From NCBI RefSeq assembly GCF_000150275.1, contig NW_002060972.1:1-64000 (forward strand): a DNA stretch of 64,000 bases, in the 5' to 3' direction. Source of the stretch: Trichoplax adhaerens. Its lineage: Eukaryota; Animalia; Placozoa. Below, piece after piece: positions 20,149 to 58,595 of this stretch (positions are counted from its first letter, which is position 1; the number at the start of each line of letters is the position of its first letter). Both the position numbers and the translations under genes were made by a program. The notes beneath the pieces are model-generated. The model was given only the letters and a program-made list of their open reading frames with translations. It did no database searches and had not been told where the DNA came from.

Positions 20149-20920
20149 ATGAACATTAAATTGATTATCCTTGCTACCTGCCTATTCGCCCTTGTCTGTA
20201 ATGCAGACACAGATGCAGAGCGTGAACCAGATTACGATGTCAAGGATGTCGATGATCGTGATGAAGAAGAAGCAGAAGAAGGATCAGAAACGGATCTGGA
20301 GGAAATAAAAAATAACATTAACATCAACAATAACAACAATAATAACAATAATAACAATAATAACAATAACAATAATAACAACAATAACAACAACAATAAC
20401 AGCAACAATAACGTAAGTGCTTAGGATATATAGCGCAAGTAAGAGTTGAGAGCCAGTTGCATAAAACTATATATGTCAAGTGATGGAACTTAGTTGATAG
20501 GATAATTTTGCCATGAACTAATTAATTTGTTACCATAGCCAACCTCTACCGTAAAATCTTATCCTTCGACAGCAATTTTTAGTTTCAATAGGAAACATAC
20601 TGAAACTTGAGCAAATTTTGTACCGCTCTTAATAACTTACTTACTATACAGGAAATTAGAATTGATTCCTTAGGCGTTTGATGATACTTTTTTCTACTGG
20701 CACGAGGTTCTAATTGGTGTGAAGTTTGTCTAGGTCTGTATTTATCATTGGAAAGTGATAGCTCTGATAAACACGATTAAAATATTTACTAATTTTCAAA
20801 TAGTGGAGTAGATGCCGCCGTAGTTGGAGACGTCGATGCAATTGGGCTAGACGCCGTCGCAGTTGGAGACGTCGACGCAATTGGGCTAGACGCCATCGCG
20901 TGAGGAATTGCCGCTGTTGA
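20149..20920 (+). CDS. Secreted prepropeptide: signal peptide, acidic propiece, poly-Asn, Arg/Trp/Cys-rich cationic C-terminus (putative antimicrobial peptide precursor, arminin-like architecture)
   Basis: Exon 20149-20412 (88 codons, GTAAGT donor) joins in phase 0 to exon 20804-20920 WSRCRRSWRRRCNWARRRRSWRRRRNWARRHRVRNCRC*. Confidence 0.85.
20310..20412 (+). repeat. (AAC/AAT)n coding microsatellite, poly-Asn
   Basis: Mixed AAC/AAT triplets in frame. Confidence 0.95.
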
Positions 20921-23388: not shown

Positions 23389-24372
23389 TTAAACGTTAAA
23401 AAGTATTCGAGTTCGAACAAAAGGCACCACCTTGTCTCTGTTGTAGTAAGTACAGACTGGCAACGGTAAATTTTTACGTAATTCTGAATTCGTAGCAACG
23501 AAAATTATGGGATTAATAGCGATATTGCAATAAGTTAATATGAGAGCAATTTGAGCTAAACTTTTATTTACAGTGTGATCGCTTTCATTACACCAATAAC
23601 GAATAACACCATTGAGTAATAAAACATTAAATGGCAACCAACATAAGACATTAGTTCCAACAATTAATGAGATGGTTCTTAATGGTATTAGTATACTTTG
23701 ATAGCGGTTTCTATCTTTGAAAGCTTTATTGTAAGCAATAACGAATTGGATTAAGTTACAAGATATGATTACCGCTACAGTTATGCTAACACCGATAGCA
23801 TAAGCAGTATTAATAGCATCGTTTCTACTATTTACGTGAAATGGTAGCCAACATGTTGTTAAATGATAATATCGTCCGAAGCCACGATTTTCTAGAGATA
23901 GCAGTGGCATTATTGCCAATATTAATGGCCCGATGTAACAAGTCACAACGCCTAAAGCATAATTTCTAGCGGAAGTTTGTCTAATGTAGGTGAAAGGAGC
24001 TACCACTGCATGACATCGTTCTACACTTATCGCTACAGATAACATAAATGATGCGCCATTAAATATGCTGATTAAAAAGCCTTGCAATTGACAAAGTGAA
24101 TTATGATTACCGATACAAACCATGGCAATTAAGAATGGTATTACAAATAAACTGGTTAAGAAGTCATTTATTGCAATAGCTGATAAAAGGACGTTGCTGT
24201 AAGTCCTTAATGAGGGTGTAAGATAAATGGTCCATAAATTGAAAAAATTGCCAAGCAATGCTGTAATCATAATAATGGACAAAAACATGATTTCAGCAGT
24301 CGGAGATAAACCAGTGAAAATGTCCATAGTTTCATTTACTAATAAAGAATGAGACGAATTTGGATTGGACAT
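23389..24372 (-). CDS. Single-exon rhodopsin-like (class A) GPCR, 327 aa
   Basis: Seven hydrophobic helices, GN in TM1, A..D in TM2, SVERC (DRY-like), CWLP in TM6, INPIIF (NPxxY-like), N-terminal N-glycosylation sequons. Confidence 0.93.
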   Translation of the reverse strand: MSNPNSSHSLLVNETMDIFTGLSPTAEIMFLSIIMITALLGNFFNLWTIYLTPSLRTYSNVLLSAIAINDFLTSLFVIPFLIAMVCIGNHNSLCQLQGFLISIFNGASFMLSVAISVERCHAVVAPFTYIRQTSARNYALGVVTCYIGPLILAIMPLLSLENRGFGRYYHLTTCWLPFHVNSRNDAINTAYAIGVSITVAVIISCNLIQFVIAYNKAFKDRNRYQSILIPLRTISLIVGTNVLCWLPFNVLLLNGVIRYWCNESDHTVNKSLAQIALILTYCNIAINPIIFVATNSELRKNLPLPVCTYYNRDKVVPFVRTRILFNV

Positions 24373-27300: not shown

Positions 27301-30259
27301 TTTATGGAAGGTTTTCGTATTGCTCAAGACTAGTTTTACGCTATGAATGAAGTGCTAACGGTTTTAAGCAGAAAAAAGGTTCATGTATCGAAAAGAAGAT
27401 AATTTATCCATGTAAGTCACTGCGCGACAAAAGTATGCATAACTGGATGACTGCATTAAAGTGCATTAGGTAAAGTGTCTATGCTTGTCATACAGTCAGT
27501 AGAATTAATCTATTAGGTGAGTGATTGATTAATTGCTTTTATTAAGTATGAAAGTACAGGATATGAGAGTTTATTAATGAAGATGAAAAACTAATATGTA
27601 TACTTCCCGTTCATTTTGATTGTAATAAGTACAACTTGGCCGCTGTACAATGAATTCACGCTAGTCTAAAATTAAATCTGATACAAATCATATTGTTTCA
27701 AGGAACGCCTACAGTGTCGAAACCATTAGCAAGCCTTTTTTTTACGATAGACTTACCTTGATGGCGCAACTCATTAAGTTTGACAACTGCAAACGACTAA
27801 TATTAATGACCATATTTATATCTACGTACAGTACGAAGACAGATAGAAAAGGAGTATTATCACGAGACAGCTCAATCTATATGACAAATAGAACTACTAT
27901 CAGTATAGCAAGGTAATTGCTGTTCACTAAAGAACTTAATGTGGACATAGATCAATTGCCGATATTGTGCACTCTCCAACAAGGACTTTAATTTTTTATG
28001 AAATGTGACACAGCTTAAGATGGCGTCTTTTGTTCACATTTGTGTTCTAAAGTAAAGAGACTAACTTTAAAAATTATTGCTTTAGTTGATACAAGAAATA
28101 AAATTGTCTTCTTCTATAAATGGTTCAGTAAAATTTTGACTTCTATATTTTCTAGTCCGTTAATATTGTCAATTTTTCATGTTGTTGTTAACTTCTAAAG
28201 GATCAAACCACCAATATGCGAGAATTTCCTTAACTAATACAAAGGATAATATAACATTTTAAAATCAACTACCTCTACTCAACAGTAATAGAAAAGTAAG
28301 TTAAGAACGAGTGACACATAATACATTCGGTAAACTACAGGGGATAATTTATTAACGTTATGGCTAGTTATACAAATTGATCTAGTTTAGGGCTTAAAGA
28401 ATTTTAGCAGTGTAATAACCATGGTTCTTTAATTAGTGTATTAACATTAGTAACTTTCATAAAAGTCAGAATCGCATTCTTATAAGGTAAGAGCATGGGA
28501 TGCAATTCATTTACTCTGCTATATAAATCACTTGGGAATATGAAAGTTGCAGTTATTTTACAATGGCGGTATTATTGCTCCTCAGGTTAGTACTTTTCGA
28601 TCAACCACTTTTTCTCAGGTAAAGGTACCTTATTGATGAAGCGATCGAAGATCATTACAATAAGATATTATTAATCTGAATTTTGTCCACCCATGTACTT
28701 TCAGTAGAAATTTCCTACTGTGAGTTAAGTAATTATTGTCACAATTGAAGTCCATCACTTTTATTAGAACTATTTCAGTAATAGCATAAAGGTAACTGCA
28801 TAGCTTACTTCAATTATTAAATTTATATTCTAAGCATTCAATTCAATCATCAAAATTAGTTTAGTTAGAAATGACGTCAAAGAGATAGAAATACACGTAT
28901 GATGATATGCTTGTGTTCTACTTTTCATTTAACGTATAACATTTTACAATTTTGAACAATAGACTTTTAGGCCTTTTGCGAATTATAACCTACAGGTTTT
29001 CCAGATATATTGTCTGCAAGTGAATATATTATAGACATCTTTCGGGGCATATAAAAGGCTACTTTTTCATTTAGGATCTTATTCAATTGGGCACGATCTT
29101 GCGTATAGAAATTTTTCTGAAGTTTGAGGATCCTTTCTTTTCAAGAAAATTAGAAGGTAAATTACCTTTATGGCAAAAATTAATTTTTGTATCTAATGGT
29201 ACTGAAAAATTGGTTCAATTGGAATAAGTCCTTTCCAATTTCTCTGAAATCACTTTACTGTTTGTTAAATTATTAATTTTGCAGATTACTTTCATGATGC
29301 TACTTGCAGCAAAAGCTTCTATAGAATCCTTGCATAGCTATCATTTCTCTAATTTACGTATCTATGCTAAATAATGCATTTTCGAGAGATACTACTGCCA
29401 ACTAAAAATCCTTTAAGAATCACTTACATCATTACAGCCTCCTTACGCTTTCCTATAATTAATGAACGCATTGGCTCATTCGACTTCAGATTTAAATTTC
29501 GATAATTTAATTCAACTTCGAAATTATCTCCATTTGGTTTAATATCTGCTATACCTCAATCCCAGTTATACATAGTACTTTATTATGTGTACCAATCAAG
29601 TAATGAATTTATTTGCTATTGGTTAATTAATGTTTCAAAATTGTTGGGTTCTATTATTGCTATAAGGTAGATAAAGTATAAGTAACATAAATTTGTTAAA
29701 CAACCATTATTGATAGGTTTTAAGGTAATAAATTAAAATAATTGTATTTTTTAATAGATTGGGTTCTATTAAATCGTAATAGTAGTTTAGTGATTTTTTT
29801 TACTGTAAGCAGTTTTAAGTGATGCATCAGCTACTACTATATATTTTTATAGCATGCTTTTCGAGATATTACTGATAATTCGGACACAGATTTTGCTTGA
29901 AATTGGAACTCATTTCTTGTTTAAGTCTTTATTGACTTCATTTCATTATTTTATAAATTGGAATGTTTTTCATATGTATTTTGGTTCATTGGAAAAAAGA
30001 ATCAGATAATTGACACCCGTTCTCTAAATAGATAAGGTCGTTTTAACTATAGAAAGATATTTTATTGTCAGGTCCTTAACTACTTTAATGATCTCAATTT
30101 CTGTAAACGTCAGATAAATTAGTTATTCGAACTTTACAACCATTACCAGGTGGATAAAAATGTTTTATTTTATAGAAAAGATTTAAAACTTATAATTTAA
30201 GAAACCAGTAATCTTAGATTTACTTGCAATCCTAATTCTTATACATTGCTTGATCAGCT

Positions 30260-33200
30260 ATGAATATAAAAATAGCCTTCATCGCTACCTTATTCCTTGC
30301 TTTCGCACTGGCAGAAGACAATGAGCTGGGAATTGTACAAGAAAATGAAATTGAAGAGGCTTTGAAAGACATCAATTTAGATGAAGACTTGCAGCTCTTA
30401 GATCATGAAGATGATGAAATGGAGGATAATATTGAGAGATTAGCGGTGAGTGTCCGCAATTTTAATTTAGATTACATATTATTTTTACAAAAAGCCAGTA
30501 ATCAATTCGCTAAGGACGATTTTCTACGTCACTGGACGACTTAGCTAATTGAATGATAGAGACAACGCCGTTATATTATTAGTGTTAATCAAGTAATTAT
30601 TTATTGCCAGCAATAATGCTAATCATGATATTCTGCAGCATACTTTTGCTTCATTGTATATAGTAAATCATTCATTACACTTATGGTTTAGGAAGATAGC
30701 TAGGACTGTAATTCGGTCTTGCATAAGGCATTTATGTTTGATATACAACATTCTATCGCTATTGTTGATTCATATTTAAAAGTTTTGTGGATTTGATTTC
30801 AATGTTTAGTTACATGTTATGGTTTTTTGAAATGCAATACCATTATTATATTCTGTGTCATGAGAATATTACTGCATATTACACTGAGTAAATATTTCAG
30901 TGTTTAGTAATATGCTATGGTTATGTAACATGCAATACTATTGTTGTATTTAATTTCATGAGAATACTGCCATATTTTATACTAAATATAGATCTATAAA
31001 GTACAATCCTGCACTGTATAGTTTTATTTCAGTTATGAAGTTACTAATGTATTCATTCCATTTTGGAATAAAAATGACGTCAAAATGATACCTGTGATTT
31101 AATAGGCTATGAAAAAGAAATCTAAGAAGGCTTGGTGGGTAAGTGATTCAAATAACGAAAAGCAATATAACCTACGCTTTTGTTGCTTATTTGAAATATT
31201 AGATGTGCTTTTGATTTATAGCTGCTAAATATATTTATTGCTCGAGTAGATAAAATAATTGATGTAGTAAACAGCAATTCGTTACTGCATAACTCATTAA
31301 TTTTATTAAGANNNNNNNNNNNNNNNNNNNNNNNNNNNNNNNNNNNNNNNNNNNNNNNNNNTTATCGATTTTATGCTATAAACAAGATTCACAGCTTAAA
31401 ATTTAGCCCTACTTTACAGCGACAATATTCACAATGCTGTACATAATTTTATTTTATATGATTAGTAATACAGTAAAACTTAACTTTATAAGTATAGTTT
31501 GTTGAAAAATACTCTAATTTTGATAATCTTTTATCATGAATGAGATGAAAGCTAATTTTTGCTTGCATTGCCATCAATATTAATCAATAATAAATTAAAA
31601 TTTCAGTTGAAATGCAAGTTATTAGGTCAATTTCATGTGTTGGTTTCCATAAGATTAACGCTTTCATTTGATATAAATGAAATTGCTTTTTTTTGTTTAC
31701 TATTCCTTTGAACAACATGAATCTATTTTCTTGGGCCAATATGCTACCGGCAACTATATCTCTAGTGGGTGAGTATAATATTTTATGCTCTTAAAAGTTT
31801 AATATTTAGAAAAAAATTTTTAAGATTAAATATCTTCGTTATAATTTATTTCATAATCATTTCTCAACTTCAATTGTAACTGAAAATATTTGGCCATTGC
31901 CTTCTACTAAACTACAGTCTGTAAGTTGAAAAGAACAATCAATCATTTAGTTTATCAAAATTTTATAATTATAATCAGTTCTAATCTGCTATCCCTTTAT
32001 TCCAAATTATATATTATGAATCGATTCACTTTTACCAAATAAAAGAGAGTAAGTTGAATCATGATGTATACTAATAATGTATAATTTAAATTAAACTTAT
32101 TAATGTTAGATATTTTTTTTAATCATCGAATCTTTAAAATCGATTTTATATTTGGGGCTATACATATTCAAATTGTATAGCGGGTAAGTAAACTTACTAA
32201 ATTATTATTAAAATTTAAATAATAACTCTCATTGTTAATTCTTTCGGTATCTTTTCCTGCAGTATAGCATAAATACTTAAGTTAATGTTCTTATAGTTGT
32301 TGCCACCATTCATGAGAGTACCTCTAGCGCTACGTATTTTTTATATACGCGCACGTAAAAGCAGCCGTAGTTTGGCTATCATAGCAGCTTTACATTAAAT
32401 ATTAATTTGTTTTTTGACTGTATTAATTCGTTAGAAGTCTTTATTTTAGCTAGATTTGAAATATTCACTGCAATAGCTTAGATAAATATTTTTGGTAAAG
32501 GGTATTAATATTGATTCTATTAAATTTGTGAAATTGTATAATTGATATTAACCTCAACGCACACATGAACTAAACCATAAAGCGCGTAAGAGCTTTTCTA
32601 GAAATAAATTGATGAATGCTATACTTTATTATGCTTATTAGTTGTATATTGATTAATACCTTATTTTTTTATTTTAATTATGCGACATTAACCCGCTCAA
32701 TCTACTTAATGGAATGTGTGGGTATTACAGCGCGTAAGTGATAGCTATTTTGGCTAATATTTACATTAGTACTCCAGTCTGTAGAGTACATGTTATCTAT
32801 AAAATAAACCTTCTGCATTTACGATTTAATAACATCAGCATTGATTTGTAACAGAAATAAGATGCATAGTTATATCGTGCAAGACTCAACTTAATGCTAT
32901 TAATAGGACCAGATTTAAAATTCTTGTTTCTATCAAAATTTAATTCTTGTAAATTGTTTGTTATAAATCCCAAAATCCTTGCAATCGATATCATCTTCTT
33001 CTAAACGGCATAGCATGTAAGTTAAAAATAAAAGCTCTTGAATTTGATTACATATATAGTATCTTCCTGACACAGGATGAATAACATAATATTCTAGTGC
33101 ACATTTATTAGGGCCTTATTAACAACCTTGATAAACTATTTCGTAATTAGTTTTAATTCTTATTAATTTGAACTGCGATGAAAACTGAAATTTTATTTGA

Positions 33201-35189
33201 CTATCGACGTCAATGAAACTAAACTAAACAGACGGTGAGTTGAAAAAAAGCTATTATATTTCTCTATAATATCAATAATTTCATTATAATTATAATATTT
33301 TAATCATTTACCTTATCTGTCTCCAACCCAATCTTACGAATTCATTGATATCGGATAAATTGTAGGGTGTAAGTATAAATTGTTTGGATTATTCATGGTT
33401 TTATTTTCCTCTGTAAAAATAGTCGCGATTAAATAAACAAAAACTTTTGCCGTTATTTCGTTAAAAATCCGCAACATTGATTCAATTGTGGCTTGGCTGT
33501 TACATTCAAATCATACAGCGAGTGCGTTAGTAGCTGAGCATCATAGCTTTTATTGTTATCTTACTCATATGTTCAAGGAATACTAAACAAGCCCATTAAA
33601 CTTCTATATTCATGCGATAAATATCAACGATCCCGATAAACATATTAATTTCTGTCTGTTATCCATACAGCGCGTAAGTTAATTTTTAATTATGCTTAAT
33701 ATGATTAAAATATTACATCGTTAGAAAGTAAAGATTAATTATAAAAGACTCATATAATTTGTTACGCAGTTTGCATTAACCGAAATTATTTTAATTTCTC
33801 AATCTATGTAATCGTTATAAATTTCAAATATCAACATGAATTCGACCTGGTAGCGTGTAAGTTCTTTGTAACTAATTACAGGAGATTTGCTTAATGTTGT
33901 TAAATACCCAGCAGAATAATTTAGAATAATTCATGAATGGGCCTAATATTGTAGTTTCTTTTTACCATGACGCTTATCTCTAAATAATGAAATAATTCCT
34001 TTCGCAAAATGTAAATCGAATTAACTATTTATAGCAAGTAAGTCGCAAAATATGTAATTGACGTAACTTGATTAAAAATTTCTTCAAGTGAACTCAGTAT
34101 AAAGCCTAGGAAGTCTAATAACATTTTCTTATTTTTCTCTATCTTATTGGGAATAAATCTGAATCCGTCGATAAAAATAAAAGACTGTAAGTCAAATGGG
34201 CTTAAGCAAATACTGTGGGATATAAATTTTAGCGTGATTTTAACATAGTCTTGGTTTGAAACGTTCTAATGTATTTTACTTTTGGATTACTTTCAATTAT
34301 ATCGCTATTAATGGATCTACAGATTGTAAGTTTGACATTATTGAATGAAGATATAAAAATCAGCTCTTACTGACTGTACTCATTGCGATAAAAAGTAGAA
34401 CGACATTTCTCTAACATATTGATCATTATGCTTTCAATATATGACACTATTTAAATTTATCTGACTTCGGCAAAAATCATAGTGGGTAAGTTTTTATCCA
34501 ATTTGACTGCTAGAAATATCCTTTAAGTCAATAAATACTCTTATATCGATCATGGCTAACATTACTTATTATTATTTCTTATAAATTTTTCATGAAATGG
34601 AAAATGATTCGGTTTTAAAATTTCACTTAATGTAAAACTTTTAGAGTGTATGTGAATTAGACGACTAGTAAATTCAGTTTGCTAGAAATTGGATATATGT
34701 GATAAATTAATGACTTGATTTTTAATTGCAATTTTTTGATCATAAAATGAACGATCCTACTCTACAAATGTTGGTTGTCGAATTCAGGCAGTAAGTTGCA
34801 ATCGACTTAAAATTCATTCTTAATACCTTATAATTAATAATGAAATTCATCCTAACAAAGACTACCATATTTATTTATAAATGATACATCCTGAATTTTT
34901 ATGAAGTCCTCTACGGGCTAATTTCGCGAGGGTGAGTGTATTAAAATTTTCATATCGAACGAGGTAGTGAATGAATCTGACTACAACTTCTAATGCTTTC
35001 TTTATTAATCATTCTGATTTAACGATTGAATTGCTGCAACTATCCAATATTACTATAGCCCGTTAGTTAACAAGACCACACGTATTTCATATTTTGTAGT
35101 ATAAACTTGAGGATCATAGCTGAAATTGTATGATGTTAACTTAACCGTCTTTTCATCACTAAATTACGCTTTAATAGCAGAATAATTGA
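30260..35189 (+). CDS. Second secreted prepropeptide (signal + acidic propiece + cationic C-terminus); C-terminal part apparently encoded by 3-nt micro-exons; 3' end uncertain
   Basis: Exon 1 30260-30445 (MNIKIAFIATLFLAFALA-EDNE...IERLA, GTGAGT donor, phase 0); exon 2 31106-31138 (AMKKKSKKAWW, GTAAGT); gap; 19 AG|NNN|GT units at 31766-35061; candidate last exon TAG|CAG AAT AAT TGA at 35178-35189. Confidence 0.7.
31312..31361. other. Assembly gap inside the micro-exon prepropeptide gene
   Basis: N run, preceded by an acceptor-like TTTTATTAAG|A. Confidence 0.99.
31766..35061 (+). other. Array of at least 19 single-codon (3-nt) micro-exons
   Basis: AG|codon|GT at 31766 TGG, 31918 TCT, 32046 AGA, 32181 CGG, 32583 CGC, 32731 CGC, 33014 CAT, 33232 ACG, 33366 GGT, 33519 CGA, 33671 CGC, 33854 CGT, 34035 CAA, 34184 ACT, 34323 ATT, 34483 TGG, 34645 AGT, 34788 GCA, 35059 CCC; 13 donors are GTAAGT and 2 are GTGAGT. 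Confidence 0.82.
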
Positions 35190-38100
35190 GCAAAACTAAG
35201 CTGGGAAAGTTTAACTTTAACGTAAATACTTAGTCATTAACTATAAGGTAAAAATGATTATCAAATTTAGTAACGTAGGTTAGATTTTAAGATCATATAG
35301 CCCCTGATTATGAAGGATAGTCTATAGCATATGAACTGCAGTGTTTGAATATTATACCTTTTGTAGGCATTTTAGATAAGTTCGTTAGACCAAATACTGG
35401 TTTTGCACTACGAGATCTATATCAATAGGAAAAGTAAGTTATTCATAAACAAGAAAATTATGGAAGCTATTAAGACAACATAGTTACAAGCTTTGATAGT
35501 CCGTGGTATTAGAATTAATTCAGGCATTTATGACTAGGTTTAGTTAGGAATTCAGATCTTGATGGAGAATTTCGAGATACTAAGAGCATGTCCATCACTT
35601 TTTCCGTGCAAACTCTATGTTTCTTGCTACTGTAGAGCTAAGATAATCAGCTGCAAATATTTTCAAAATAGTATGCTATGCATTCTTAAAAAAGACTAAG
35701 CTAGTAGGAATGAATGAAATTCTTACAAGTATCTGCTATTCCTAATGCCTAATAGGCAATCATTGATAAATACACTGATTTATATAAGATGGAGCAATTT
35801 TATAAGAAGGCTTAGTCATGTCGCACTTTTTTTGAGATACATTATTAGGTAATGATTTGCATTTAAATTTACTATTCAATTTGCTTTTTAATTCTTGTAA
35901 TTACTATTAAATTCCCTATTAGGAATAAATGGCAAGCTTGCATATGGCTTTAGTTGAAAATTAAAAGCGATTTTTGGCGAACAAGAGCGAATTTAGTTAT
36001 AGCGACGGATAAATGTTGTTGAATTTACATTATAATTACAAGATAGATCTATAGCATTTATCATTAGTGAGGGTTATGTTGTGGTATAATCAGGAACGTA
36101 TTAATATTCTATCCGATTAATTGCAAATTTCATAGCTGTATAACAATTACTTATGTCATCTTGGTTTACATTGGCTAATTTCATACACCGATGGTATTTA
36201 AAATGTTAATCAATACACTTAAAGGCAATTTCTTACGAATTAATACTAACAATAAACATTTCAAATTGATTGTATATGTAAGGTGTCACGAATAACCTGT
36301 TAAAGAACCAATACTTTGTCAAGTGTAACTAATGATTTCTGAAGTAAAAATCGGTGGAATCTACAGTTCAGCTTTTGAGATAGAATACACGCAGTGAACA
36401 GGATTGTAGAATTTAAATACAAAATTTACCGTAACAAACTATGTAATAGCAAATGACGGTGGAAAATAGCGAAGATTGTAATTGTTATAAATAACTAAGC
36501 ACAACAAGCTATGTTCGAATAGTGTGTGAGGAGACTGTAAAGATATCTACATTTTAGTACGATACAAAATGTCTATATTCTGTAATGAAAAGTATCAGAA
36601 AGAGCTAAATCGCGATCTCATCTCTGAGACGTATTTCAATATCACCGTAATCTATAAATTCGAGGAATGACGGATGCTGTTGTAAAAATTTTATTGAAGA
36701 TGTTATTTCTACCGATTACATATCAATCATTGACCGGATACCAATCGATATTGAAGGAATGGATATTAGTCTTACAGTTTCTTGGTCTATTAAATTTACT
36801 TTAGAATTTGATAAGATGCCAAGAACTCTTACGAGTGAAGGTGAAGTAAGCGAAATTCATAGATTAGTCTTGATTTTTAATTCTTAAACTAATCAATGTG
36901 CAAACAAAATACCGTAAGAAAAATTATAAAGGATATTCAACTTATGGAGCGACGTAAGCAAACAAAATAATTAGATATAAAAGGAGATTCATCTTATAGA
37001 GCGATGCATAAAATAATAAGATATGAAAGAATATTCATCCGTCTTACAGAGCGATAATTTAAAACTGAGATAGCATTGATAAGATGAATATTCCAGTTAT
37101 TCCCATAGAATGATATAATATTAGGAACATGTCAAGGATTATTTTTTATTTGGAAAAAGTATGCTTATGTGATATGAAGAAGTTTTGGTGTAGTAAAGTA
37201 TGTACTGGGTTTGTAAATGTCAACTTGCTGTGTAATCGTGCACTTTTACTAGGCTACCTTCAGCCTAAATTTTGGAGATTAATTAAGCATTCAATTACCT
37301 ATTATACTCAAGTGAGATATTTACAATTGCAAACGTGAGATGTTTCATGTGCAATTTGGTGAAGGAGCGTATTTATTTTCTACGTTTCGATACATTTTTG
37401 TATCAGTAAACTGATGAGACAGATACACGAGAGCTCTAAAAACAATTTTTAGCGTATTTCTACATCACTATCACCAGCCGGTAAACTTAATCTATAATTG
37501 TTGTCACCGATACTCTATTAAATCTCTGATTTACCAACTATGAACTTTAGTGTAAATTATTACCATTTAATTAATCGTTGAAAATTCAAATCAGCAATTT
37601 AAATTTCGACTATACTTGCAAGATTGAAATGTATAACCTTCCTACTACTACTAAATAAGAATCTAATTTTACCATGCAAATGTATGGACTTACAATTAAG
37701 CTAATAAATGAATTTGGAATTGTATACCTGGTACAGCTTTTAAAATAGAAATCAGTTTACTTTTAGACGATCATAAGAGCAATTGCTTGGGCAAAATGTT
37801 CGTCATCATCGTGATTTATAGGTCATCCAATATGTATTGCTAATGCTGCATGCAATTATACGTCGATTATTTGATAGTATGCCTTGTGTGCTGCCGTATT
37901 ATGCAATATGTAGTAATAAGTGATTTATTTAATAGCTGACCTCTCCTCATTAATCGTTCCTGAAATAAAATTAGTCTCTACCTAGCAATAATTAATTTCT
38001 ATGTGTCCTCATTATGGATTTCTAACATACATGAACAGAGGACTGAGAAGAACGGCATCCAAATTGATCAAAAAGAATTTAATGCACCAAAATATACTCG

Positions 38101-38602: not shown

Positions 38603-40688
38603 ATGGCTTTTGAAAGATTCACACCATATTCATTTACAAGCTGTGCTGTAATATTAATCATTGCTTTACTACCTTATTCTAACACTCAAATTATCATTCC
38701 TACTACAACTGGTTTAGTTAGTGGTAAAATAGTGAACACGAATGGCGTTGATCAGTTCGCCTATCTCGGCATTCCTTACGCTCAACCGCCTGTCGATCAA
38801 CTACGATTTAAGCCACCAGTACCAATAGATCAATGGTCTGGCATTTTAAACGCTACAGGTTATAAAAATAGCTGCCCTCAACAAACACCCATATCTCTTT
38901 TAGATCCAAATTCAACTGAAATGCAAATCAGTGAAGATTGTCTTTACCTCAACATTTTCACACCTAATCCTAGTAGTGCCGGAAATAGGTCAGTACTCAT
39001 ATGGATACATGGCGGTGGATTCAGTTATGGAACCGGCTCATGGTGGCAAGGGCAAATGTTGTCTGCCAACGAAGATATCGTCGTGGTTACAATGAATTAC
39101 CGACTTGGAATCTTTGGTTTTATGACATCAGGTGAAAAGGATGTAAATCAAAGATCTATTCCAGCAAATCTAGGTTTACAAGATCAAAATTCAGCCTTAA
39201 AATGGATTAACGATAATATCGAAAATTTCGGAGGCAACAAAGATCAAATTACAATAGCAGGCAACTCAGCTGGAGCTGTTGCTGTTGCCAATCACCTAGT
39301 TATGCCATCTAGTAATGGATTGTTTAGGCGTGCTATCATACAAAGCGCAGTTTTCAGAGATTCACCATCCTATTATAAAGCTAAATTGACATCTGAGTTT
39401 ACACTTTCCGATGCAAACAAATTCTTTGCACAATATAGTATGGCAGCCAAATGTTATAAAAACACAACAATAGAGACTGTAAATTGTTTAAAAGCTTTAT
39501 CAATCCAACAATTATTACAAATTCAAATGAGGTTTTCTGGAAGTAATCCATATTTCCCCGTTGTTGATGGTGACATAATACCAGAATCAACTTATAAAGC
39601 TTTTGCTTCAGGAAAGTTTGAAAAGGCCGACATTATGATAGGCACAATGCTAAATGATGGCTATTTTTTCTTATTATTTCTGCCTAATATTTCACATGGG
39701 ATCTCACGAAATCAGTTCAAAAACTACATTAATACTAATTTTCCAGCAGCAAGTGAACGTATAAAACTATCTATCCAATATCAATATACCGACTGGGCTA
39801 ATATTAGCTCTCCAGTCGTAAATAGAGATCGATATGGCGATATGTATAATGACTATTTCTTTAGCGTGCCCAGTGAAAATTATGCAGAAGTATTTTCTCG
39901 ATATGTACCAACCTATCTCTATATATTTGCTCATCGAACTGCAGGAACTTCGATGCCAGCATTTGTTAAGGCAGTACACACTTTAGAGATCTCCTATGTT
40001 TTCGGCTATCCATTAGATCCACCCGCAAATTTTCCAGAAAAATTTGATGATACTGATCGACAAGTATGCCGACAGGTTATGTCATACTGGGGCAACTTCA
40101 TTCGTCAAGGGTAAGTAGCCTTTCAGCAATTACTATCTATGTGTGAATATAGTGTTGTAAATTAGATTAACAATCGTAGCAATGAATAATTGCAAGTCTT
40201 ACGTTAAAACTGGAAATAGCTATGGTAGACAAAATTATAGCGCATAAATTAAATTTTGCGAATTCTTAACTAGTGATAGACTGCTATAGAATATATAATG
40301 ATACAAAGTCAATCATCAAATAATTGCCTTTCCTTGATTACGATGATTAAGGAATCCGTCAGATTCAACCTCTGCACTCGCCTGGCCAAGATATGAACAA
40401 ACAAGCAAAGACTACATGTGGATTGCACCTAAATTAGCAATTAAAAAAAATTACTACAGTAAGCAAGTTGCATTTTGGAATCAATATCTTCCGCAACTGG
40501 CTACACTCACAACTGCAACTGTACTTCCAACTCCCAAATCAACAACGACAAGTACAGGATCACATTCATTAGAATCCACATATATGATTGCAATGTATGT
40601 TCTTGCAGGTGTTGCCGGATTATTATTGCTTATTGTAATTATCCTACTTTGCAAATTAAATAAAGGCAAACGGTTATATGTTGTGTAA
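38603..40688 (+). CDS. Type-B carboxylesterase/cholinesterase/neuroligin-family type I membrane protein (exons 38603-40110, 40352-40688)
   Basis: Signal peptide, YLGIPYAQPP, SEDCLYLNI, WIHGGGF, NYRLG, GNSAG, HTLE; phase-2 intron restores RQG|NP..WPRY; Thr-rich stalk, TM helix, short tail ending LYVV. Confidence 0.93.
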
Positions 40689-44992: not shown

Positions 44993-47900
44993 ATGATAAA
45001 GGATGCTCTTGTCAAAGAATCAATTGTAAATCAATTATTGGCTGATAGAATAATTAGCATCAATCAGGTGATCAGGGACAAGTTCGGACAAATAAATAAC
45101 ATTAGTCACGACAGGGCTGTATATGCGTAAATTGAACATGTGGCCATTTGTAGGTTTGTAACTCCGCTTCTGTTTAAGAAATTAAAAAAATCTTTCCTTT
45201 TAGAACTAGTTCTATCATCAATAAATAGCGCTATGCCGGTGGTACTATTTAGTGGATCCTTCTCGAACAATCGTGGTTCTACGGTAACTCATCTCAGTGT
45301 TGTGCTCATTTTAATGACAGATAAATTGGATGCAATTGATAATAATAATATTACAACAGGACGACAATGTCCCTAAGCTTCCACGAGTGGATTGCAGTCA
45401 AACAGTGTCCAACATAATGGAAGCCAACCAATCAAAGATTTGCCAAAATATGCCAATATCAGTCATGCGTCAAAAATTGGTAGAATATTCAGTCATTGAG
45501 GAAGACAGTTTGCAACAAACGAATGAGAGTAGTGATGATGATAACGAAATGGCAAATTTAATATTGGAGAAGTTGGAAAATAGCGGAGATCGAGGGTTTT
45601 ATATCTTTTGCAATATACTAAAGGAGCAATCGGATGAGCAACTCCGATTACTTGGCTTCCAACTTAGCGATGAAGCAAAGCAAACCATGGGCCTTTCGAA
45701 TGATGGTACCCTATTGCATAGAATTGTATTTTGAATATTGAATGATTATAATATTGGCTGAATTTTATATAGATGCATTTGTGATTTTCTGTATCTGATT
45801 GTTTCGTTTTTACTTGATGTTTTCATACAAGTTCTGTTAGATCATATTGATAAACATAAATGCTATTTATGTATCACACTATAACAACTTTACTGAATTT
45901 TCTGATGCTAAATTCATGTTCGTCATATCAATGATTTGTTAAAATGCATTAAGATAGTCGGCATCATTTCGTATCAGTTACAGATAGCTATCCGATACCT
46001 TTGCTAAATATCAGTTTATGATAGTGTTTAAACAAAATGATCGTATCTAATCTATATCATATCATTCTCAACAATCTTTTATCACTTACAGACCTCCTGC
46101 GAAATGTTCCTCCTTTACCACAACATCATTTTATCGTACGAAACGATTTTGCTAATCAAACTGCAATTGCAATTATGAAAATTCACGCAAGCGGTGGTAG
46201 ACTACTCGTTCATGGTCCTTCTGGCACAGGTAAAACTGTTGCCGTAAGTAACTCTTTACAATATGTCATTAGACAGAAGGAGCAATTTCTACCTCATGGC
46301 GTCTACTGGGTTAAAATTGGTAAGTTTACATAACGTCAATTCGATCAAGTGAAATTGCTACTTTAATTTGAATGTATTGCTGCTGGCATGTTATAAGACG
46401 GAAATTACATCATTAGATATTTTGGTTCAGTTTTCAAAATCAGATTTAAAATTTTAAACGTGTTTCTTCTTTAAATTGCACAGGTAAGGTAGATGAACAG
46501 AAATTGTTTGGAATACTGTATAATTTGGCAACTAAGCTGAGAATCAAACCGCAAACTTTTCCGAACTTAAAGAAGCTTAATCAGGCAATCTCTAGTCATT
46601 TTGTGGGTAAACAATACAATTCTACGCTGATTACATTACGATGATTGTGCCAATTGCCTATGAAAACAACTATTCTATCATTTTTATAATGATAAAGTTA
46701 TTCAATATGCGGATATGACAATAATGGTAGAAAAATAACTTTACGATTTTTTTCAAAATTATAGTGAATTCGGATTTATCCTTTACCTTATTCGTCTTTG
46801 ATGAAGTGGAAGAGTCATCCTATTTGAATTATTTAACATTCGCTAAAAATTGTGTCGTTATTTCTACCCAGTCTAATCAAGCTATGGTTGAAAAATTCGA
46901 TTACATTACTCAATCTCAGGCTAGTTTCCTAGTCGATATATAAGTTTAGCCTCGCTAACTCTGCTTAGGTGTAGTAAAAGTGCTTAATAAATTGATAACT
47001 TAGCTTATACGAGTAAATCCATATCGTATTACAATAGTTTTCTAGCTTAAGTAGCTATATGTATGCGATTAATGCTCTTGTGATAATAATTATAATAGGA
47101 GAGCTTTACCCAACAAGAGGCTTCACAGATAATAGCCTCATTTCAAGAAAGTGGGAAAACGGAACCATGGATTAACGATGACGTAGTGAAAAAAGTAGTA
47201 GAAAAGTACCGATCAAGTCCGCAAGCAATCGCTTTAATCGGTGGGACTCAACTGTCATCCTTAGACGAATGGTTAGATATTCAAAAATTTACAGAATCGG
47301 AACCGGTAACCACATTTTCACATACTTTTTTCACCATGGTCATGAATAAACTACCTACAAAGACAAGGGAATTGTTTTCCTTGCTGGGTGTATGTTACAG
47401 AGTTGAAATTCCCATTTCCACTGTCGCTATAATATGGAATCTACCGGTTAATGAAGTATCAGTCATACTGCAAGAATTACATCGACGATCATTGCTATTT
47501 TATTTTAGTAGCAGTAATAAAAGGTAAAAATAATAACAGCTAATAAACGTAAACCATACTTATGGAATCAGGCATTTATACTGAAACAAAATAATCTCTA
47601 TCTGGGCATCTAAGTATCAAAATATATTTACTAAATCATCTCAATCATACGGAATTATCACATGATATTATATTACATGAAGTAAAAGTCGTTACTCATA
47701 AATAGAAATATCAGATTGCAAGGTCATCATGAAATGGGATCTAAATTGATCATTCAAGAGGGAATTTTAAATTTTCATTTCGCTTCCGCTTAATTTCGTG
47801 TCTTATTAACTATCTGTTACCGAATAATTACAATTTATTTATAATCATCGAGTAGATATTACTAATTGAATTTTACGCTAAAATTTGTAGGGGTTACTGT

Positions 47901-56121: not shown

Positions 56122-57375
56122 AGTCGATGTATTTCTTGCAACGGATTATATAAAGTAGTGATAATGAAAAAGTGATTGAAAAGATATGAGCATGCAGGAA
56201 ATATCAATAGATTGATTTTCTATAACTGGTAGATGGTAATATTAGTACGAGCACAGTTCATTCATGATATTGACTAGGCAGAATATTAGATGCTCTTCTT
56301 TATTGTAGGAGCCTATTAATCTGGATAAATGTTTAAAACTCTTAGAGAATTAGAATATTAGGAAAGGTTATTAATAAAAGGGATATATTTTGGATCAATT
56401 TATGGATTGAAGCTTTGAATTAAAATTTGAACGTTTTTCTATAACAACCGAGTTTATAATATTATAAAAATGAACAGCGTATTTTTAATACGTGCGAAAA
56501 TAAAACTTGCCCTTTTATTATGTAGATTACCTTACTGATTTAAATGACAATTACGCTACAAAGTATCCGTTATTCTAGCTCATAACTGTACTAAAGATAG
56601 AGACTCGGGCAATAGGTACCTTTGCACCAATTTGCCTTGATAGGTAAACAGGGAAACCTTATCGTTATCATCGGCTATTATTATCCATTATTGTCGGTAT
56701 TTTTGACATCCTCTTATAATAAGACTCAACCGTAGTAAAGCCAGAGAAAGCCAGATATTCAAGCTATAGGTACTGTAGCATCAATTTACTTTGATGGATA
56801 GGCAAGGAAATGTTATCTCAGATCCAAAGTTATGAATAAAGCCAGAAATAGTCCACAAAATAAAGCAATTTCGATTGAATATCATTATTTCTAATTCTGT
56901 ATATCGCAAAGTCGATGATAGTGGACAGCGATATTATACCTTTGATATAAAAATAAAGGTACCATTATTCGTTTAACATCAGACCGTCGTTTCTCAGCTA
57001 TTTCTAAGCGATAATTGTATCTACCCTGATCATGATAAGTCACGATAGAGCTGTAAGTTAATCGGGACTAGCGCTTAGGTACATATTGATTATCGAATAT
57101 ATAATATAAAATATTGTTCACCATTACAATCAGTCGTAATCGCGATCATCATCTACATTTCATCGCAACGTATAACGTATTCCGTAACTTGTGGTCATCC
57201 AGACTGGATACTTCTTCCGTCAGAGCATTGGGCACACGGTAATTGAAGTTTATTTTTAAAGAGGCGTAAGAAGAATTCAGTAGTAAGCGGATATAGGAGA
57301 AATATTCAATTTGATAAAATAGCTTTTTCAATTCGTCTATTGGAATTTTCTGGTAAACGCTACTGTACGAGCTCG

Positions 57376-58595
57376 ATGAAGTATACACTCGAAGAAAGAG
57401 CTGAGATGGTGCGACTTATGCACAAGTATGAGTCGTATATCTTAGCAAAAAGAGCATTCCAGGTCAAGTATCCTGGATTAAATCCGGCAGAGAAAACCTT
57501 TAAATACAACGTGAAGAAGTATGCAATGACCCAATCATGTCATCGAAAAAAGCATAAGAAGAGACCGAACTTGGTAGGACAACGAACACCAGTTATTCAG
57601 GCCATTATTGCAAACAATCCACGTAAATCAATAAGAGAAATAGCACGGGAAACTGGTATTCCAAGAAGTTGTGTGCATCACATTTTAAAATTAAAACCAT
57701 ATAGAAAAGTCCATCGTCATGAATTGTACGATAAAGACTACAAGAAACGTAAGAATGCATGTGATGCATTTCTCGAATCCATTCGACTTCAGAATAATTG
57801 GATGTATAATATCATATTTACTGATGAGGCAACGTTCTACACCAACGGCACTGTGTGCTCACAAAATAACAGTTGGTGGAGCAAAGATAAACCAAACCAT
57901 TTTTCTATCAAGTCGAAACAAGCTAAGAAAGTTACAGTCTGGTGTGCCATTTATACGAATGGCATCATTGGGCCATATTATTTTTATGAACCTGTTTGCG
58001 GTGTAAACTATCTTACCATGTTGCAGCAATATGCGATACCTAAGATTAAGCAATTAGGCCTTCTTGATACCTGCCTATTTCAGCAAGATGGCTCTCCAGC
58101 CCATTATACTCGAAATGTCATCGATTTCCTTCACACTACCTTCAAAGGTAGGTGGATCGGTAAATTGAATATTGCACCGATCACTTGGCCGGCACGTTCG
58201 CCGGACCTTACCCCACTTGATTACTTTCTGTGGGGATACTTAAAACAACGTGTCTATCAACATAATTGTCGTCAGGATATTCCCATTCTTGAAAAAGTTA
58301 TTGAAATGGAATTAGGCACAGTCACGCAGCAAATACTACATAATGTATATGAACGTAACCGCATGCGAAGTCGGTCATTTTGCAAACTGCCCAGTTTACA
58401 AAATATCTGTCCGTATTGTCATTTTGCAAAATGCCCGGGCAGTTTGCAAAATGTCCGTCCGTATTGTCATTTTGCAAAATGCCCGGGCAGTTTGCAAAAT
58501 GACCGACTTCGCATACGGTCACGTTCATATACAATGCATTCCTTAAAAGAATACGGAAATGTGTTTCAGCTGGCGGAGGTCGCATTGAGTTATAA
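57376..58595 (+). mobile_element. IS630-Tc1-mariner transposase (DD41D/rosa-Visitor-like, DD43D spacing), interrupted near the C-terminus by a MITE
   Basis: HTH (NPRKSIREIARETGI), IIFTDEATF, KKVTVWCAI, IIGPYYF, FQQDG.PAH, GRWIG, WPARSPDLTPLDYFLWGYLK; removing 58348-58529 restores ..HNVYNAFLKRIRKCVSAGGGRIEL*, 345 aa. Confidence 0.92.
58346..58531. mobile_element. 178-bp palindromic MITE with TATA flanks
   Basis: ~43-bp terminal inverted repeats TGAACGTAACCGCATGCGAAGTCGGTCATTTTGCAAACTGCCC / GGGCAGTTTGCAAAATGACCGACTTCGCATACGGTCACGTTCA; two internal 48-bp tandem units. Confidence 0.88.

What the first reader, a model, noticed from the sequence alone, without database searches (positions are those of the whole stretch)
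31766..35061. One codon per exon: an array of at least 19 three-nucleotide micro-exons spelling an Arg/Trp-rich peptide
Seen in sequence: a 3.3-kb stretch with no credible ORF holds 19 AG|NNN|GT units, all on the + strand and mostly 130-220 nt apart. Donors are strong (13 GTAAGT, 2 GTGAGT, and one each of GTAAGA, GTGCGT, GTATGT, GTTAGT). None of the triplets is a stop. In order they read W S R R R R H T G R R R Q T I W S A P. Seven are Arg, using five different codons (AGA, CGG, CGC, CGA, CGT), and these CG-rich triplets stand out in very AT-rich introns, which points to protein-level selection. The array follows two phase-0 exons encoding a signal peptide, an acidic propiece and AMKKKSKKAWW. 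It begins WSRR, like the paralog's C-terminal exon at 20804 (WSRCRR). Inference: the mature cationic peptide is encoded residue by residue, so skipping any exon keeps frame and deletes one amino acid, allowing a combinatorial library of defence-peptide variants from one gene. Schistosome micro-exon genes are the nearest known concept; I know of no single-codon exon array like this, but could not search.
Basis: partly seen in the sequence, partly recalled or inferred. Interest (0 to 1): 0.97.

Follow-up and report, generated by a model that had tools for sequence, protein, structure and literature searches.

The report
Peptide gene with one-codon exons
In the placozoan Trichoplax adhaerens, the arginine-rich end of a small secreted peptide appears to be encoded one amino acid per exon by 18-19 consecutive three-base exons, an extreme gene architecture that I found in no paper and that every existing gene model misses.

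Summary
All 15 strict AG-NNN-GTRAGT sites on the + strand of the 64-kb window lie in 31764-34796. Both strands together are expected to give about 3. Only a 3-base spacing is enriched. The genome is Trichoplax adhaerens, and the gene is the mis-modelled TRIADDRAFT_61933.

The main new evidence is colinearity with paralogs. Conventional paralogs have the same signal-peptide/acidic exon 1 and the same small '..KAWW' exon 2. They then carry one contiguous last exon that starts WSRRRR. The single-codon exons read W S R R R R H T G R R R... in the same order. Against one paralog this is 7/7 N-terminal and 11/19 ungapped identity, using different synonymous codons. None of 100,000 shuffles of exon order matches this.

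Splice signals show no change between Trichoplax H1 and H2, where 5.4 changes are expected. Every acceptor follows an AG-free tract of at least 65 nt. At least six more arrays of this kind exist in the genome, and three of them follow homologous first exons.

No RNA data could be reached, so splicing is inferred and not observed. The 3' end of the gene and the idea of a combinatorial exon-skipping library remain untested. The scan had not noted such arrays on other DNA.

The parts
30260..30445 (+). Exon 1: start codon, signal peptide and acidic propiece (62 codons). It ends in phase 0 at donor GTGAGT (30446).
   Evidence: It is identical to the N-terminus of TRIADDRAFT_61933 (P0002). It is homologous to the first exons of 12 or more paralogs (A1).
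31106..31138 (+). Exon 2, 33 nt, AMKKKSKKAWW, phase 0-0, donor GTAAGT.
   Evidence: The JGI model P0002 also uses it. Paralogs carry an equivalent small exon, (E)QKAWW.
31766..31768 (+). Single-codon exon 1, TGG (W), donor GTGAGT.
   Evidence: The upstream AG-free tract is 110 nt.
31918..31920 (+). Single-codon exon 2, TCT (S), donor GTAAGT.
   Evidence: AG-free tract 91 nt.
32046..32048 (+). Single-codon exon 3, AGA (R), donor GTAAGT.
   Evidence: AG-free tract 65 nt.
32181..32183 (+). Single-codon exon 4, CGG (R), donor GTAAGT.
   Evidence: AG-free tract 69 nt.
32583..32585 (+). Single-codon exon 5, CGC (R), weaker donor GTAAGA.
   Evidence: AG-free tract 80 nt. It fits the colinear WSRRRR reading.
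32731..32733 (+). Single-codon exon 6, CGC (R), donor GTAAGT.
   Evidence: AG-free tract 87 nt.
33014..33016 (+). Single-codon exon 7, CAT (H), donor GTAAGT.
   Evidence: It matches the His at position 7 of the paralog exon L051:3202-3288:-.
33232..33234 (+). Single-codon exon 8, ACG (T), donor GTGAGT.
   Evidence: AG-free tract 79 nt.
33366..33368 (+). Single-codon exon 9, GGT (G), donor GTAAGT.
   Evidence: AG-free tract 113 nt.
33519..33521 (+). Single-codon exon 10, CGA (R), acceptor CAG at 33516-33518, weak donor GTGCGT.
   Evidence: AG-free tract 94 nt. The alternative register TGC/GTTAGT is rejected because its acceptor is GAG and because Arg fits the colinear RRR block.
33671..33673 (+). 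Single-codon exon 11, CGC (R), donor GTAAGT.
33854..33856 (+). Single-codon exon 12, CGT (R), donor GTAAGT.
34035..34037 (+). Single-codon exon 13, CAA (Q), donor GTAAGT.
34184..34186 (+). Single-codon exon 14, ACT (T), donor GTAAGT.
34323..34325 (+). Single-codon exon 15, ATT (I), donor GTAAGT.
34483..34485 (+). Single-codon exon 16, TGG (W), donor GTAAGT.
34645..34647 (+). Single-codon exon 17, AGT (S), weaker donor GTATGT.
   Evidence: AG-free tract 115 nt.
34788..34790 (+). Single-codon exon 18, GCA (A), donor GTAAGT.
   Evidence: AG-free tract 100 nt.
35059..35070 (+). Either a 19th single-codon exon (CCC, P; weak donor GTTAGT) or the start of the last exon (CCC GTT AGT TAA = P V S stop).
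   Evidence: The acceptor follows an 89-nt AG-free tract. This is unresolved without RNA.
35923..35929 (+). Alternative candidate last exon: acceptor AG at 35921-35922 after a 72-nt AG-free tract, then GAA TAA, with AATAAA (35924) overlapping the stop.
   Evidence: This is inference only.
20149..20920 (+). Conventional two-exon paralog in the same window: signal peptide, acidic region and poly-Asn in exon 1, then one last exon from 20804 starting WSRCRR.

Best explanation
The stretch is the 3' two-thirds of a Trichoplax adhaerens gene, mis-modelled as TRIADDRAFT_61933, for a small secreted prepropeptide. Exon 1 encodes a signal peptide and an acidic propiece, and exon 2 encodes AMKKKSKKAWW. 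The cationic end is then encoded by 18 or 19 consecutive phase-0 exons of exactly one codon each, separated by introns of 125-399 nt, and reads W S R R R R H T G R R R Q T I W S A (P). The gene belongs to a placozoan family whose other members encode the same kind of peptide (WSRRRR followed by blocks of 3-5 Arg with 2-4 spacer residues) in one ordinary last exon. Inferred mechanism: the short introns are removed one after another by intron definition. The exon offers U1 no conserved bases, so the intron side of each donor is a near-perfect GTAAGT. Each acceptor is the first AG after an AG-free tract of at least 65 nt, which suggests branch points placed far enough upstream that U2 and U1 do not collide across a 3-nt exon. 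Shown here: the sequence anatomy, its statistics, conservation of the splice signals, colinearity with paralogs, and recurrence at other loci. Inferred: that the RNA is spliced this way, where the branch points lie, where the gene ends, and that the product is a charge-masked cationic (defence-like or signalling) peptide.
For: (1) All 15 strict sites lie on one strand within about 3 kb; the window total is 17 against 3.03 expected, and only k = 3 is enriched. (2) The order of the units is colinear with contiguous last exons of paralogs. Against L051:3202-3288:- there is a 7-residue N-terminal run and 11/19 identity, and 0 of 100,000 shuffles of unit order reach that run. Against L050, L053 and L038 there are 6-residue runs (14-27 of 100,000 shuffles). 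The codons differ (TCT vs AGT for Ser; AGA and CGG vs CGC and CGT for Arg), so it is the protein reading that is conserved. (3) The exon 1 / small 'KAWW' exon 2 structure is shared with those paralogs. (4) Between T. adhaerens and Trichoplax sp. H2 there are 0 substitutions in 312 splice-signal bases where 5.43 are expected (P = 0.004). The only change in 117 exon bases is synonymous, GCT>GCC. (5) The AG-free tracts before the 19 acceptors are 65-115 nt (median 82). Thirteen conventional acceptors of the family have 25-107 nt (median 41; P = 8e-4). Nineteen of the 21 AG-free tracts of 60 nt or more in the array end at a micro-exon. (6) At least six more arrays exist on the same plan, giving 99 strict units with no stop triplet and 0-2 sites on the opposite strand. 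Three arrays follow homologous signal-peptide/acidic first exons that end in phase 0, and one is followed by an exon with an in-frame stop. (7) The introns of this array are only about 33% alike, yet they keep AG...GTAAGT. (8) The MAKER models for two sister genes in H2 are 'partial' and stop exactly at the exon-1 donor, away from any gap or contig end. This would be expected if transcript evidence could not be aligned past that point. This last point is a weak hint.
Against: The protein database holds no transcript-derived product for this gene, only mis-modelled genome predictions. The 3' end is unresolved, with no clear poly(A) signal close to 35070. H1 and H2 are about 99% identical at this locus, so the conservation test has modest power. 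Units within arrays at other loci are recent tandem copies, so counts such as 'no stop in 99' are not independent. Arrays at C1400:18-29 kb, C1365 and C1413:5.00-5.02 Mb lack an identified first exon. Long AG-free tracts also occur at some conventional acceptors, and proximal CTAAA/TTAAC-like motifs exist, so the distal branch-point idea is not established.
Confidence: 0.85

Rival explanations
1. Combinatorial library. The single-codon exons are skipped individually, so one gene yields many peptide variants that differ by single-residue deletions.
For: Every exon is symmetric in phase 0, so any skip keeps the reading frame. Four donors are weaker: GTAAGA, GTGCGT, GTATGT and GTTAGT. Schistosome micro-exon genes are thought to vary in this way (PMC4671649).
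Against: No isoform data exist. Fifteen of 19 donors are perfect GTRAGT, and all acceptors are the first AG after a long AG-free tract, which looks like design for efficient constitutive use. The full-inclusion reading is the one that is colinear with the paralogs.
Confidence: 0.2
2. The array is bypassed. Functional transcripts splice from exon 2 to a conventional last exon, and the AG-NNN-GT units are decoys, recursive-splicing-like stepping stones, or relics of a decayed exon.
For: There is no RNA evidence for inclusion. Published models (P0002, P0005, P0006) join exon 1 or exon 2 to other sequence.
Against: Those models use stop-poor intron stretches and encode hydrophobic junk. If both sites of a unit are used, the 3 nt must stay in the mRNA. 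True ratchet points have zero spacing, and k = 0 occurs 0 times here. Introns of 125-399 nt have no need for recursion. Selection on the identity and order of the triplets and on the splice signals cannot be explained if the triplets are discarded.
Confidence: 0.08
3. Chance, or a by-product of a tandem repeat or mobile element that happens to contain AG-NNN-GTAAGT, with no role in splicing.
For: Arrays at C1400, C1365, C1394 and C1413 are clear tandem repeats of 250-350-nt units. Several unrelated satellites also matched the triple pattern (C645, C1407, C1411:3.7 Mb).
Against: In this window the introns are only about 33% alike, so this is not a repeat, yet the signals are kept. The unit sequences occur only at array loci and are not dispersed. 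Strand, phase, the upstream signal-peptide exon and the colinearity with paralogs all argue against chance.
Confidence: 0.02

Closest known systems
Schistosome micro-exon genes (MEGs)
   Same: They encode secreted products. The signal peptide sits in a longer 5' exon. The central coding part is built from very short symmetric exons, so the frame is kept whatever is skipped (PMC4671649).
   Different: MEG micro-exons are described there as under 36 bp, and I recall a lower limit of about 6 bp; they are not single codons. There is no sequence homology and the phylum is different. Here, conventional paralogs encode the same peptide in one exon. Variation by skipping is not shown here.
Aphid bicycle and megacycle genes
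   Same: They are rapidly evolving secreted-protein genes with many unusually small internal exons, all of one phase, and are best recognised by gene structure rather than by sequence (PMC9168663).
   Different: Bicycle exons are phase 2 and longer, and they encode Cys-Tyr-Cys motif proteins. Here the exons are phase 0 and exactly 3 nt, and the array-encoded part of the peptide has no Cys.
Isolated 3-nt exons (for example RPS24 with 3, 18 and 22 bp micro-exons, MAP4K5, plant micro-exon clusters)
   Same: They show that spliceosomes can include a 3-nt exon and that aligners and annotators usually miss them (PMC12207440, PMC8632122, PMC8831610).
   Different: These cases are single exons or clusters of 2-3 inside ordinary genes. 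They are not 18-19 in a row encoding a whole mature peptide.
Recursive splice sites (ratchet points) of long Drosophila introns
   Same: An acceptor lies immediately next to a consensus GTAAGT donor, and the intron is removed stepwise in the 5' to 3' direction (from my own knowledge of the literature).
   Different: Ratchet points leave nothing behind (zero spacing) and serve introns of tens of kilobases. Here exactly 3 nt remain after each step and the introns are 125-399 nt.
Cationic peptide precursors with an anionic propiece (for example Hydra arminins, mussel myticalins)
   Same: They share the layout of a signal peptide, an acidic charge-masking region and a strongly cationic Arg-rich part. 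This is a resemblance by composition only.
   Different: There is no sequence similarity, no activity data and no Pfam family. The Gly followed by basic residues in this gene and its sister genes would equally fit a processed signalling peptide.

Membership tests
Schistosome micro-exon genes (MEG) | A longer 5' exon carries the signal peptide. | tested here: met
   Exon 1 (30260-30445) starts with a hydrophobic leader followed by an acidic region.
Schistosome micro-exon genes (MEG) | The central coding region is made mostly of symmetric micro-exons (under 36 bp, length divisible by 3). | tested here: met
   There is one 33-nt exon and 18-19 exons of 3 nt, all in phase 0.
Schistosome micro-exon genes (MEG) | Sequence relatedness to, or a taxonomic distribution shared with, flatworm MEGs. 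| tested here: not met
   Only Trichoplax proteins are found, and there is no Pfam family. This is an analogue, not a member.
Schistosome micro-exon genes (MEG) | Protein variants produced by exon skipping. | not testable with these tools
   No RNA data could be reached.
Aphid bicycle genes | Almost all internal exons are in phase 2, and the products carry CYC motifs. | tested here: not met
   All exons here are in phase 0, and no Cys is encoded by the array (PMC9168663).
Recursive splice (ratchet) sites | The acceptor AG abuts the donor GT directly (a zero-length exon), inside a very long intron. | tested here: not met
   Spacing k = 0 occurs 0 times and k = 3 occurs 15 times in the array. 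The introns are 125-399 nt.
Trichoplax signal-peptide / acidic / WSRRRR peptide family (unnamed, defined here) | A homologous first exon encoding a signal peptide and an acidic region that ends in phase 0. | tested here: met
   Alignment A1. A profile built from it finds 19 places in the genome, five of them at E below 1e-18 (those five are the input sequences) and further clusters on C1410 and C1411.
Trichoplax signal-peptide / acidic / WSRRRR peptide family (unnamed, defined here) | A small second exon ending ..KAWW or ..KAAW. | tested here: met
   This gene has AMKKKSKKAWW. The C1410 copies have (E)QKAWW or QKAAW, each before a GTAAGT donor.
Trichoplax signal-peptide / acidic / WSRRRR peptide family (unnamed, defined here) | A C-terminal part starting WSRRRR, followed by Arg blocks with short spacers. 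| tested here: met
   Exon-by-exon comparison gives 7/7 and 11/19 identity with L051:3202-3288:-, and 0 of 100,000 shuffles of unit order match it.
Cationic antimicrobial peptide precursors with an anionic propiece | Antimicrobial or membrane activity of the mature peptide. | not testable with these tools
   Only the charge layout is seen.

The most novel reading that the evidence does not exclude
Trichoplax has a class of genes in which a mature peptide is encoded with one residue per exon. The class arose in one of two ways: introns were gained at every codon boundary of an ordinary exon, or the ordinary paralogs arose by en-bloc cDNA-mediated loss of an ancestral array. The arrays now evolve by gain and loss of [intron + codon] units. 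They may also be spliced in alternative ways to give single-residue deletion variants, that is, a peptide repertoire tunable one amino acid at a time.
Probability: 0.25. Interest if true: 0.95.

Novelty: new variant of a known kind. Interest (0 to 1): 0.88.

Why it matters
If RNA confirms it, this is the most fragmented coding sequence I know of: a whole mature peptide with every codon in its own exon, repeated at several loci of an early-branching animal.

- It gives a natural system for asking how a spliceosome handles runs of 3-nt exons. Testable points include the order of intron removal, the need for strong intronic donor bases, a possible floor of about 65 nt on the AG-free tract, and what happens to exon-junction complexes.
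- Paired paralogs encode the same peptide with 0 or with 18 extra introns. That is an unusually clean case for studying massive intron gain against en-bloc intron loss.
- All public gene models at these loci are wrong. Small secreted peptides of placozoans, and perhaps of other animals, may therefore be missed systematically by annotation and by read aligners.

Tried and rejected
- **Spliced product in protein databases.** Three searches used exon 1, the 94-aa read-through with region 1-62, and a family profile. They found only genome-based mis-models: P0001 reads through the donor; P0002, P0005 and P0006 continue into junk exons; P0003 and P0004 are partial.
- **Joined model.** Exons were searched by reference, and the comparison with paralogs was done position by position in a script.
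- **Literature.** Ten searches found no paper on nuclear micro-exon arrays in placozoans or on runs of 3-nt exons in any organism. The library is incomplete.
- **Mobile 'introner' origin.** Unit sequences occur only at array loci and are not dispersed. An active element is therefore unlikely, although an ancient one is not excluded.
- **Recursive splicing.** Rejected, because zero spacing is absent from the array.
- **Alternative register at 33521 (TGC/GTTAGT).** Rejected in favour of CGA/GTGCGT.
- **Pfam and Rfam.** Nothing was found.
- **First exons of other arrays.** None was found for the arrays at C1400:18-29 kb, C1365 and C1413:5.0 Mb.
- **Tree of first exons.** The array genes cluster, but branch support is weak. 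The direction of change (gain or loss of introns) is therefore not settled.


Full report
**Identity of the DNA.** The window is contig C1385 of a 105.6-Mb assembly in 1414 contigs. Exon 1 of the gene translates to the N-terminus of TRIADDRAFT_61933 of Trichoplax adhaerens (P0002). It is 98% identical to TrispH2_006281 of Trichoplax sp. H2 (P0001). G+C content is 27-37%. The neighbours are an intronless 7TM receptor ORF on the - strand and a carboxylesterase on the + strand.

Reading 30000-35600 and scanning by script gives all 19 units at the stated coordinates, with the stated donors and triplets.
- The strict pattern AG-NNN-GTRAGT occurs 15 times on the + strand, all between 31764 and 34796. 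It occurs nowhere else on that strand in 64 kb, and twice on the - strand.
- Dinucleotide-preserving shuffles of the window give 3.03 +/- 1.66 for both strands together, and none reaches 17.
- When the spacing between AG and GTRAGT is varied from 0 to 18, the array holds 15 sites at spacing 3 and 0-2 at every other spacing. The 3-nt gap is therefore the selected feature, and zero spacing (a recursive splice site) is absent.
- Introns are 125-399 nt.
- Exon 1 (30260-30445) and exon 2 (31106-31138) both end in phase 0, so each triplet is a codon.

**Splice-site anatomy.**
- Every one of the 19 acceptors is a YAG that follows an AG-free tract of 65-115 nt (median 82).
- Elsewhere in the same introns the median AG-to-AG gap is 7 nt.
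- Nineteen of the 21 AG-free tracts of 60 nt or more in the array end exactly at a micro-exon.
- Thirteen conventional acceptors of the same gene family have tracts of 25-107 nt (median 41; one-sided Mann-Whitney P = 8e-4). The floor of about 65 nt therefore seems specific to the micro-exons.
- CTAAY- and TTAAC-like motifs often sit at the upstream edge of the tract. In the related arrays at C1394 and C1413, a conserved TTACTAAG lies about 70 nt upstream of the AG.
- Proximal CTAAA- and TTAAC-like motifs also exist, so the branch-point position is not settled.
- The exon triplets do not resemble the usual (C/A)AG end of an exon. This fits the near-perfect intronic GTAAGT as compensation for U1 pairing. 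That last point is my inference.

**The decisive comparative result.**
- A profile of the first exons (A1) finds 19 places in the genome. I fetched ten of them.
- Members on C1410 (four tandem copies), on C1411, and the copy at window 20149 have the same signal-peptide/acidic exon 1. The C1410 copies also have a small second exon ending ..KAWW or ..KAAW. All then have one ordinary last exon. In six of them (the C1410 copies, L038 and the window copy) this exon begins WSRRRR, WRRRRR or WSRCRR; the other C1411 copies begin WWRRRR or WWGRRRR. Blocks of 3-5 Arg follow, separated by 2-4 residues.
- This gene has ..KKAWW in exon 2. Its single-codon exons then read W S R R R R H T G R R R Q T I W S A P.
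- Compared position by position with L051:3202-3288:- (G000:C1410, which starts WSRRRRHVYRRRR), the first 7 residues and 11 of 19 are identical without gaps. No shuffle of the order of the 19 units, out of 100,000, gives a run of 7.
- L050, L053 and L038 give runs of 6, reached by 14-27 of 100,000 shuffles.
- The codons differ between the genes: Ser is TCT against AGT, and Arg is AGA and CGG against CGC and CGT. What is conserved is therefore the amino-acid reading.
- I see no explanation other than that the triplets are, or very recently were, joined in this order and translated in phase 0.
- I did not send a joined sequence to any search tool.

**Conservation between lineages.**
- The H2 ortholog (L039) is 99.3% identical and keeps all 19 units.
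- I pooled this locus with two sister loci that are 97% and about 95% identical (L048, L049; L049 may be a paralog of the C1400 gene rather than its ortholog) and counted substitutions only.
- The 312 AG and GTRAGT positions show 0 changes where 5.43 are expected from the surrounding intron (Poisson P = 0.004).
- The 117 exon positions show 1 change, which is synonymous (GCT>GCC).
- The 30 nt upstream of the acceptors show 13 changes where 20.4 are expected (P = 0.057).
- The power of this test is modest, but the direction is as expected for working splice sites.

**Recurrence in the genome.**
- Pattern searches for three units in a row and inspection show further strand-pure arrays:
  - C1413:9352962-9358588 (17 strict units)
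  - C1394:621885-624888 (10 units)
  - C1400:795787-796532 on the - strand (4 units)
  - C1400:18204-29153 (24 units in four blocks)
  - C1365:14780-19975 (9 units)
  - C1413:5004856-5014629 on the - strand (20 units)
- Together with this window that makes 99 strict units. None is a stop triplet, and 0-2 sites lie on the opposite strands.
- The first three of these arrays lie downstream of homologous signal-peptide/acidic first exons that end in phase 0 at a GTRAGT donor.
- The C1413:9.35-Mb array is followed by an acceptor and a short exon with an in-frame stop, KRKKKSMQI-stop.
- In those arrays the [intron + codon] units are recognisable tandem copies, with mean identity 0.42-0.86. In this window the introns have diverged to about 0.33 identity but keep the signals.
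- Unit sequences occur only at array loci, so they are not a dispersed mobile element.
- On a weakly supported tree of first exons, the four array genes need only one change of state; 0 of 500 label shuffles do as well. This is compatible with a single origin or a single loss.

**State of annotation.** Every public model is wrong in its own way.
- P0001 reads through the exon-1 donor.
- P0002 (JGI) uses exons 1 and 2, then strings together intron stretches that end on micro-exon donors.
- P0005 and P0006 add junk exons.
- P0003 and P0004 (MAKER, evidence-based; PMC6057997) are 'partial' and stop exactly at the exon-1 donor, with no gap or contig end nearby.
- That last pattern would be expected if transcripts exist whose 3' part cannot be aligned. 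This is only a hint.

**What is not known.**
- No RNA data could be reached, so inclusion of the exons, their order of removal and any skipping are all inferred.
- The 3' end is open. The last unit may be a micro-exon (CCC with weak donor GTTAGT) that joins to an acceptor at 35921, followed by GAA TAA overlapping AATAAA. Alternatively, the last exon starts at 35059 and reads P V S stop.
- Function is guessed from composition. An acidic propiece facing a part with about 12 positive charges resembles charge-masked cationic defence peptides. However, Gly followed by basic residues (HTG-RRR here, and ..AGG-KRKKK in the sister gene) would also fit a processed, amidated signalling peptide.
The signal strength and the colinearity with paralogs point to a defined full-length product.
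- Whether the arrays arose by intron gain at every codon boundary, or the ordinary paralogs arose by cDNA-mediated loss of all 3' introns, cannot be decided without an outgroup.

**Comparison with known systems.**
- By function and layout the gene works like a schistosome micro-exon gene: a secreted product, the signal peptide in the 5' exon, and symmetric micro-exons (PMC4671649). It also resembles aphid bicycle genes in some respects (PMC9168663).
- It is not a member of either family. There is no homology, the phase differs from that of bicycle genes, and it comes from another phylum.
- Single 3-nt exons are documented, for example in RPS24, in MAP4K5 and in plants.
- I found no report of a run of single-codon exons.
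- I therefore rate this a new, extreme variant of the micro-exon-gene idea, of high interest, and conditional on RNA confirmation.

Noticed in passing
G000:C1413:5003000-5019900 (- strand; loci L042, L043): About ten 12-nt micro-exons, each with a long AG-free tract and a GTRAGT donor and open in one shared frame, lie on the same strand ahead of 20 or more 3-nt exons. This may be a second and larger kind of micro-exon gene. No first exon was found.
   Followed up: partly
G000:C1400:18204-29153 and G000:C1365:14780-19975 (loci L033, L044, L034, L045): Four plus two blocks of tandem [about 250-nt intron + codon] units, mostly CGC (Arg) and 71-86% alike. No signal-peptide first exon was identified within the fetched DNA.
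   Followed up: partly
L054 and L056 (G000:C1411:7400700-7405000 and 7417900-7422200): Conventional family members carry two or three tandem copies of the last exon (KWWRRRRR.. or KWWGRRRRRF..), each behind its own acceptor. These may be mutually exclusive alternative last exons.
   Followed up: no
L049 vs G000:C1400:795787-796532: The H2 locus has five Arg units (CGT AGA CGC CGT CGC) where the H1 locus has four strict units, so unit number may differ between lineages. L049 may, however, be a paralog rather than the ortholog.
   Followed up: partly
window 31313-31362: An assembly gap of 50 N lies in the intron after exon 2. In Trichoplax sp. H2 the matching stretch is about 440 nt, includes a duplicated segment of about 130 nt and has its own 20-N gap. 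No extra micro-exon was seen there.
   Followed up: yes
window 20310-20415: The conventional paralog's first exon ends in a tract of about 30 codons made up almost entirely of Asn (AAC/AAT), lying between the acidic region and the donor.
   Followed up: no
window 23389-24372 (-), 38603-40114 (+), 57340-58863 (+), 47186-47527 and 62671-63084 (+): Other ORFs in the window: an intronless 7TM receptor, a carboxylesterase, a long ORF that looks to me like a Tc1/mariner-type transposase (not tested), and two related ORFs that may belong to duplicated genes.
   Followed up: no
upstream of micro-exon acceptors, for example window 34012-34034; L035 and L040 units: A shared A-rich, CG-containing motif (roughly AAATCGAAYTAAAT just before the AG) replaces a normal pyrimidine tract in the arrays of C1385, C1413 and C1394. 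The C1400 and C1365 arrays share a different motif (ATGGCTNTAACGATTACT). These could be dedicated splicing-factor sites or simply common descent.
   Followed up: partly
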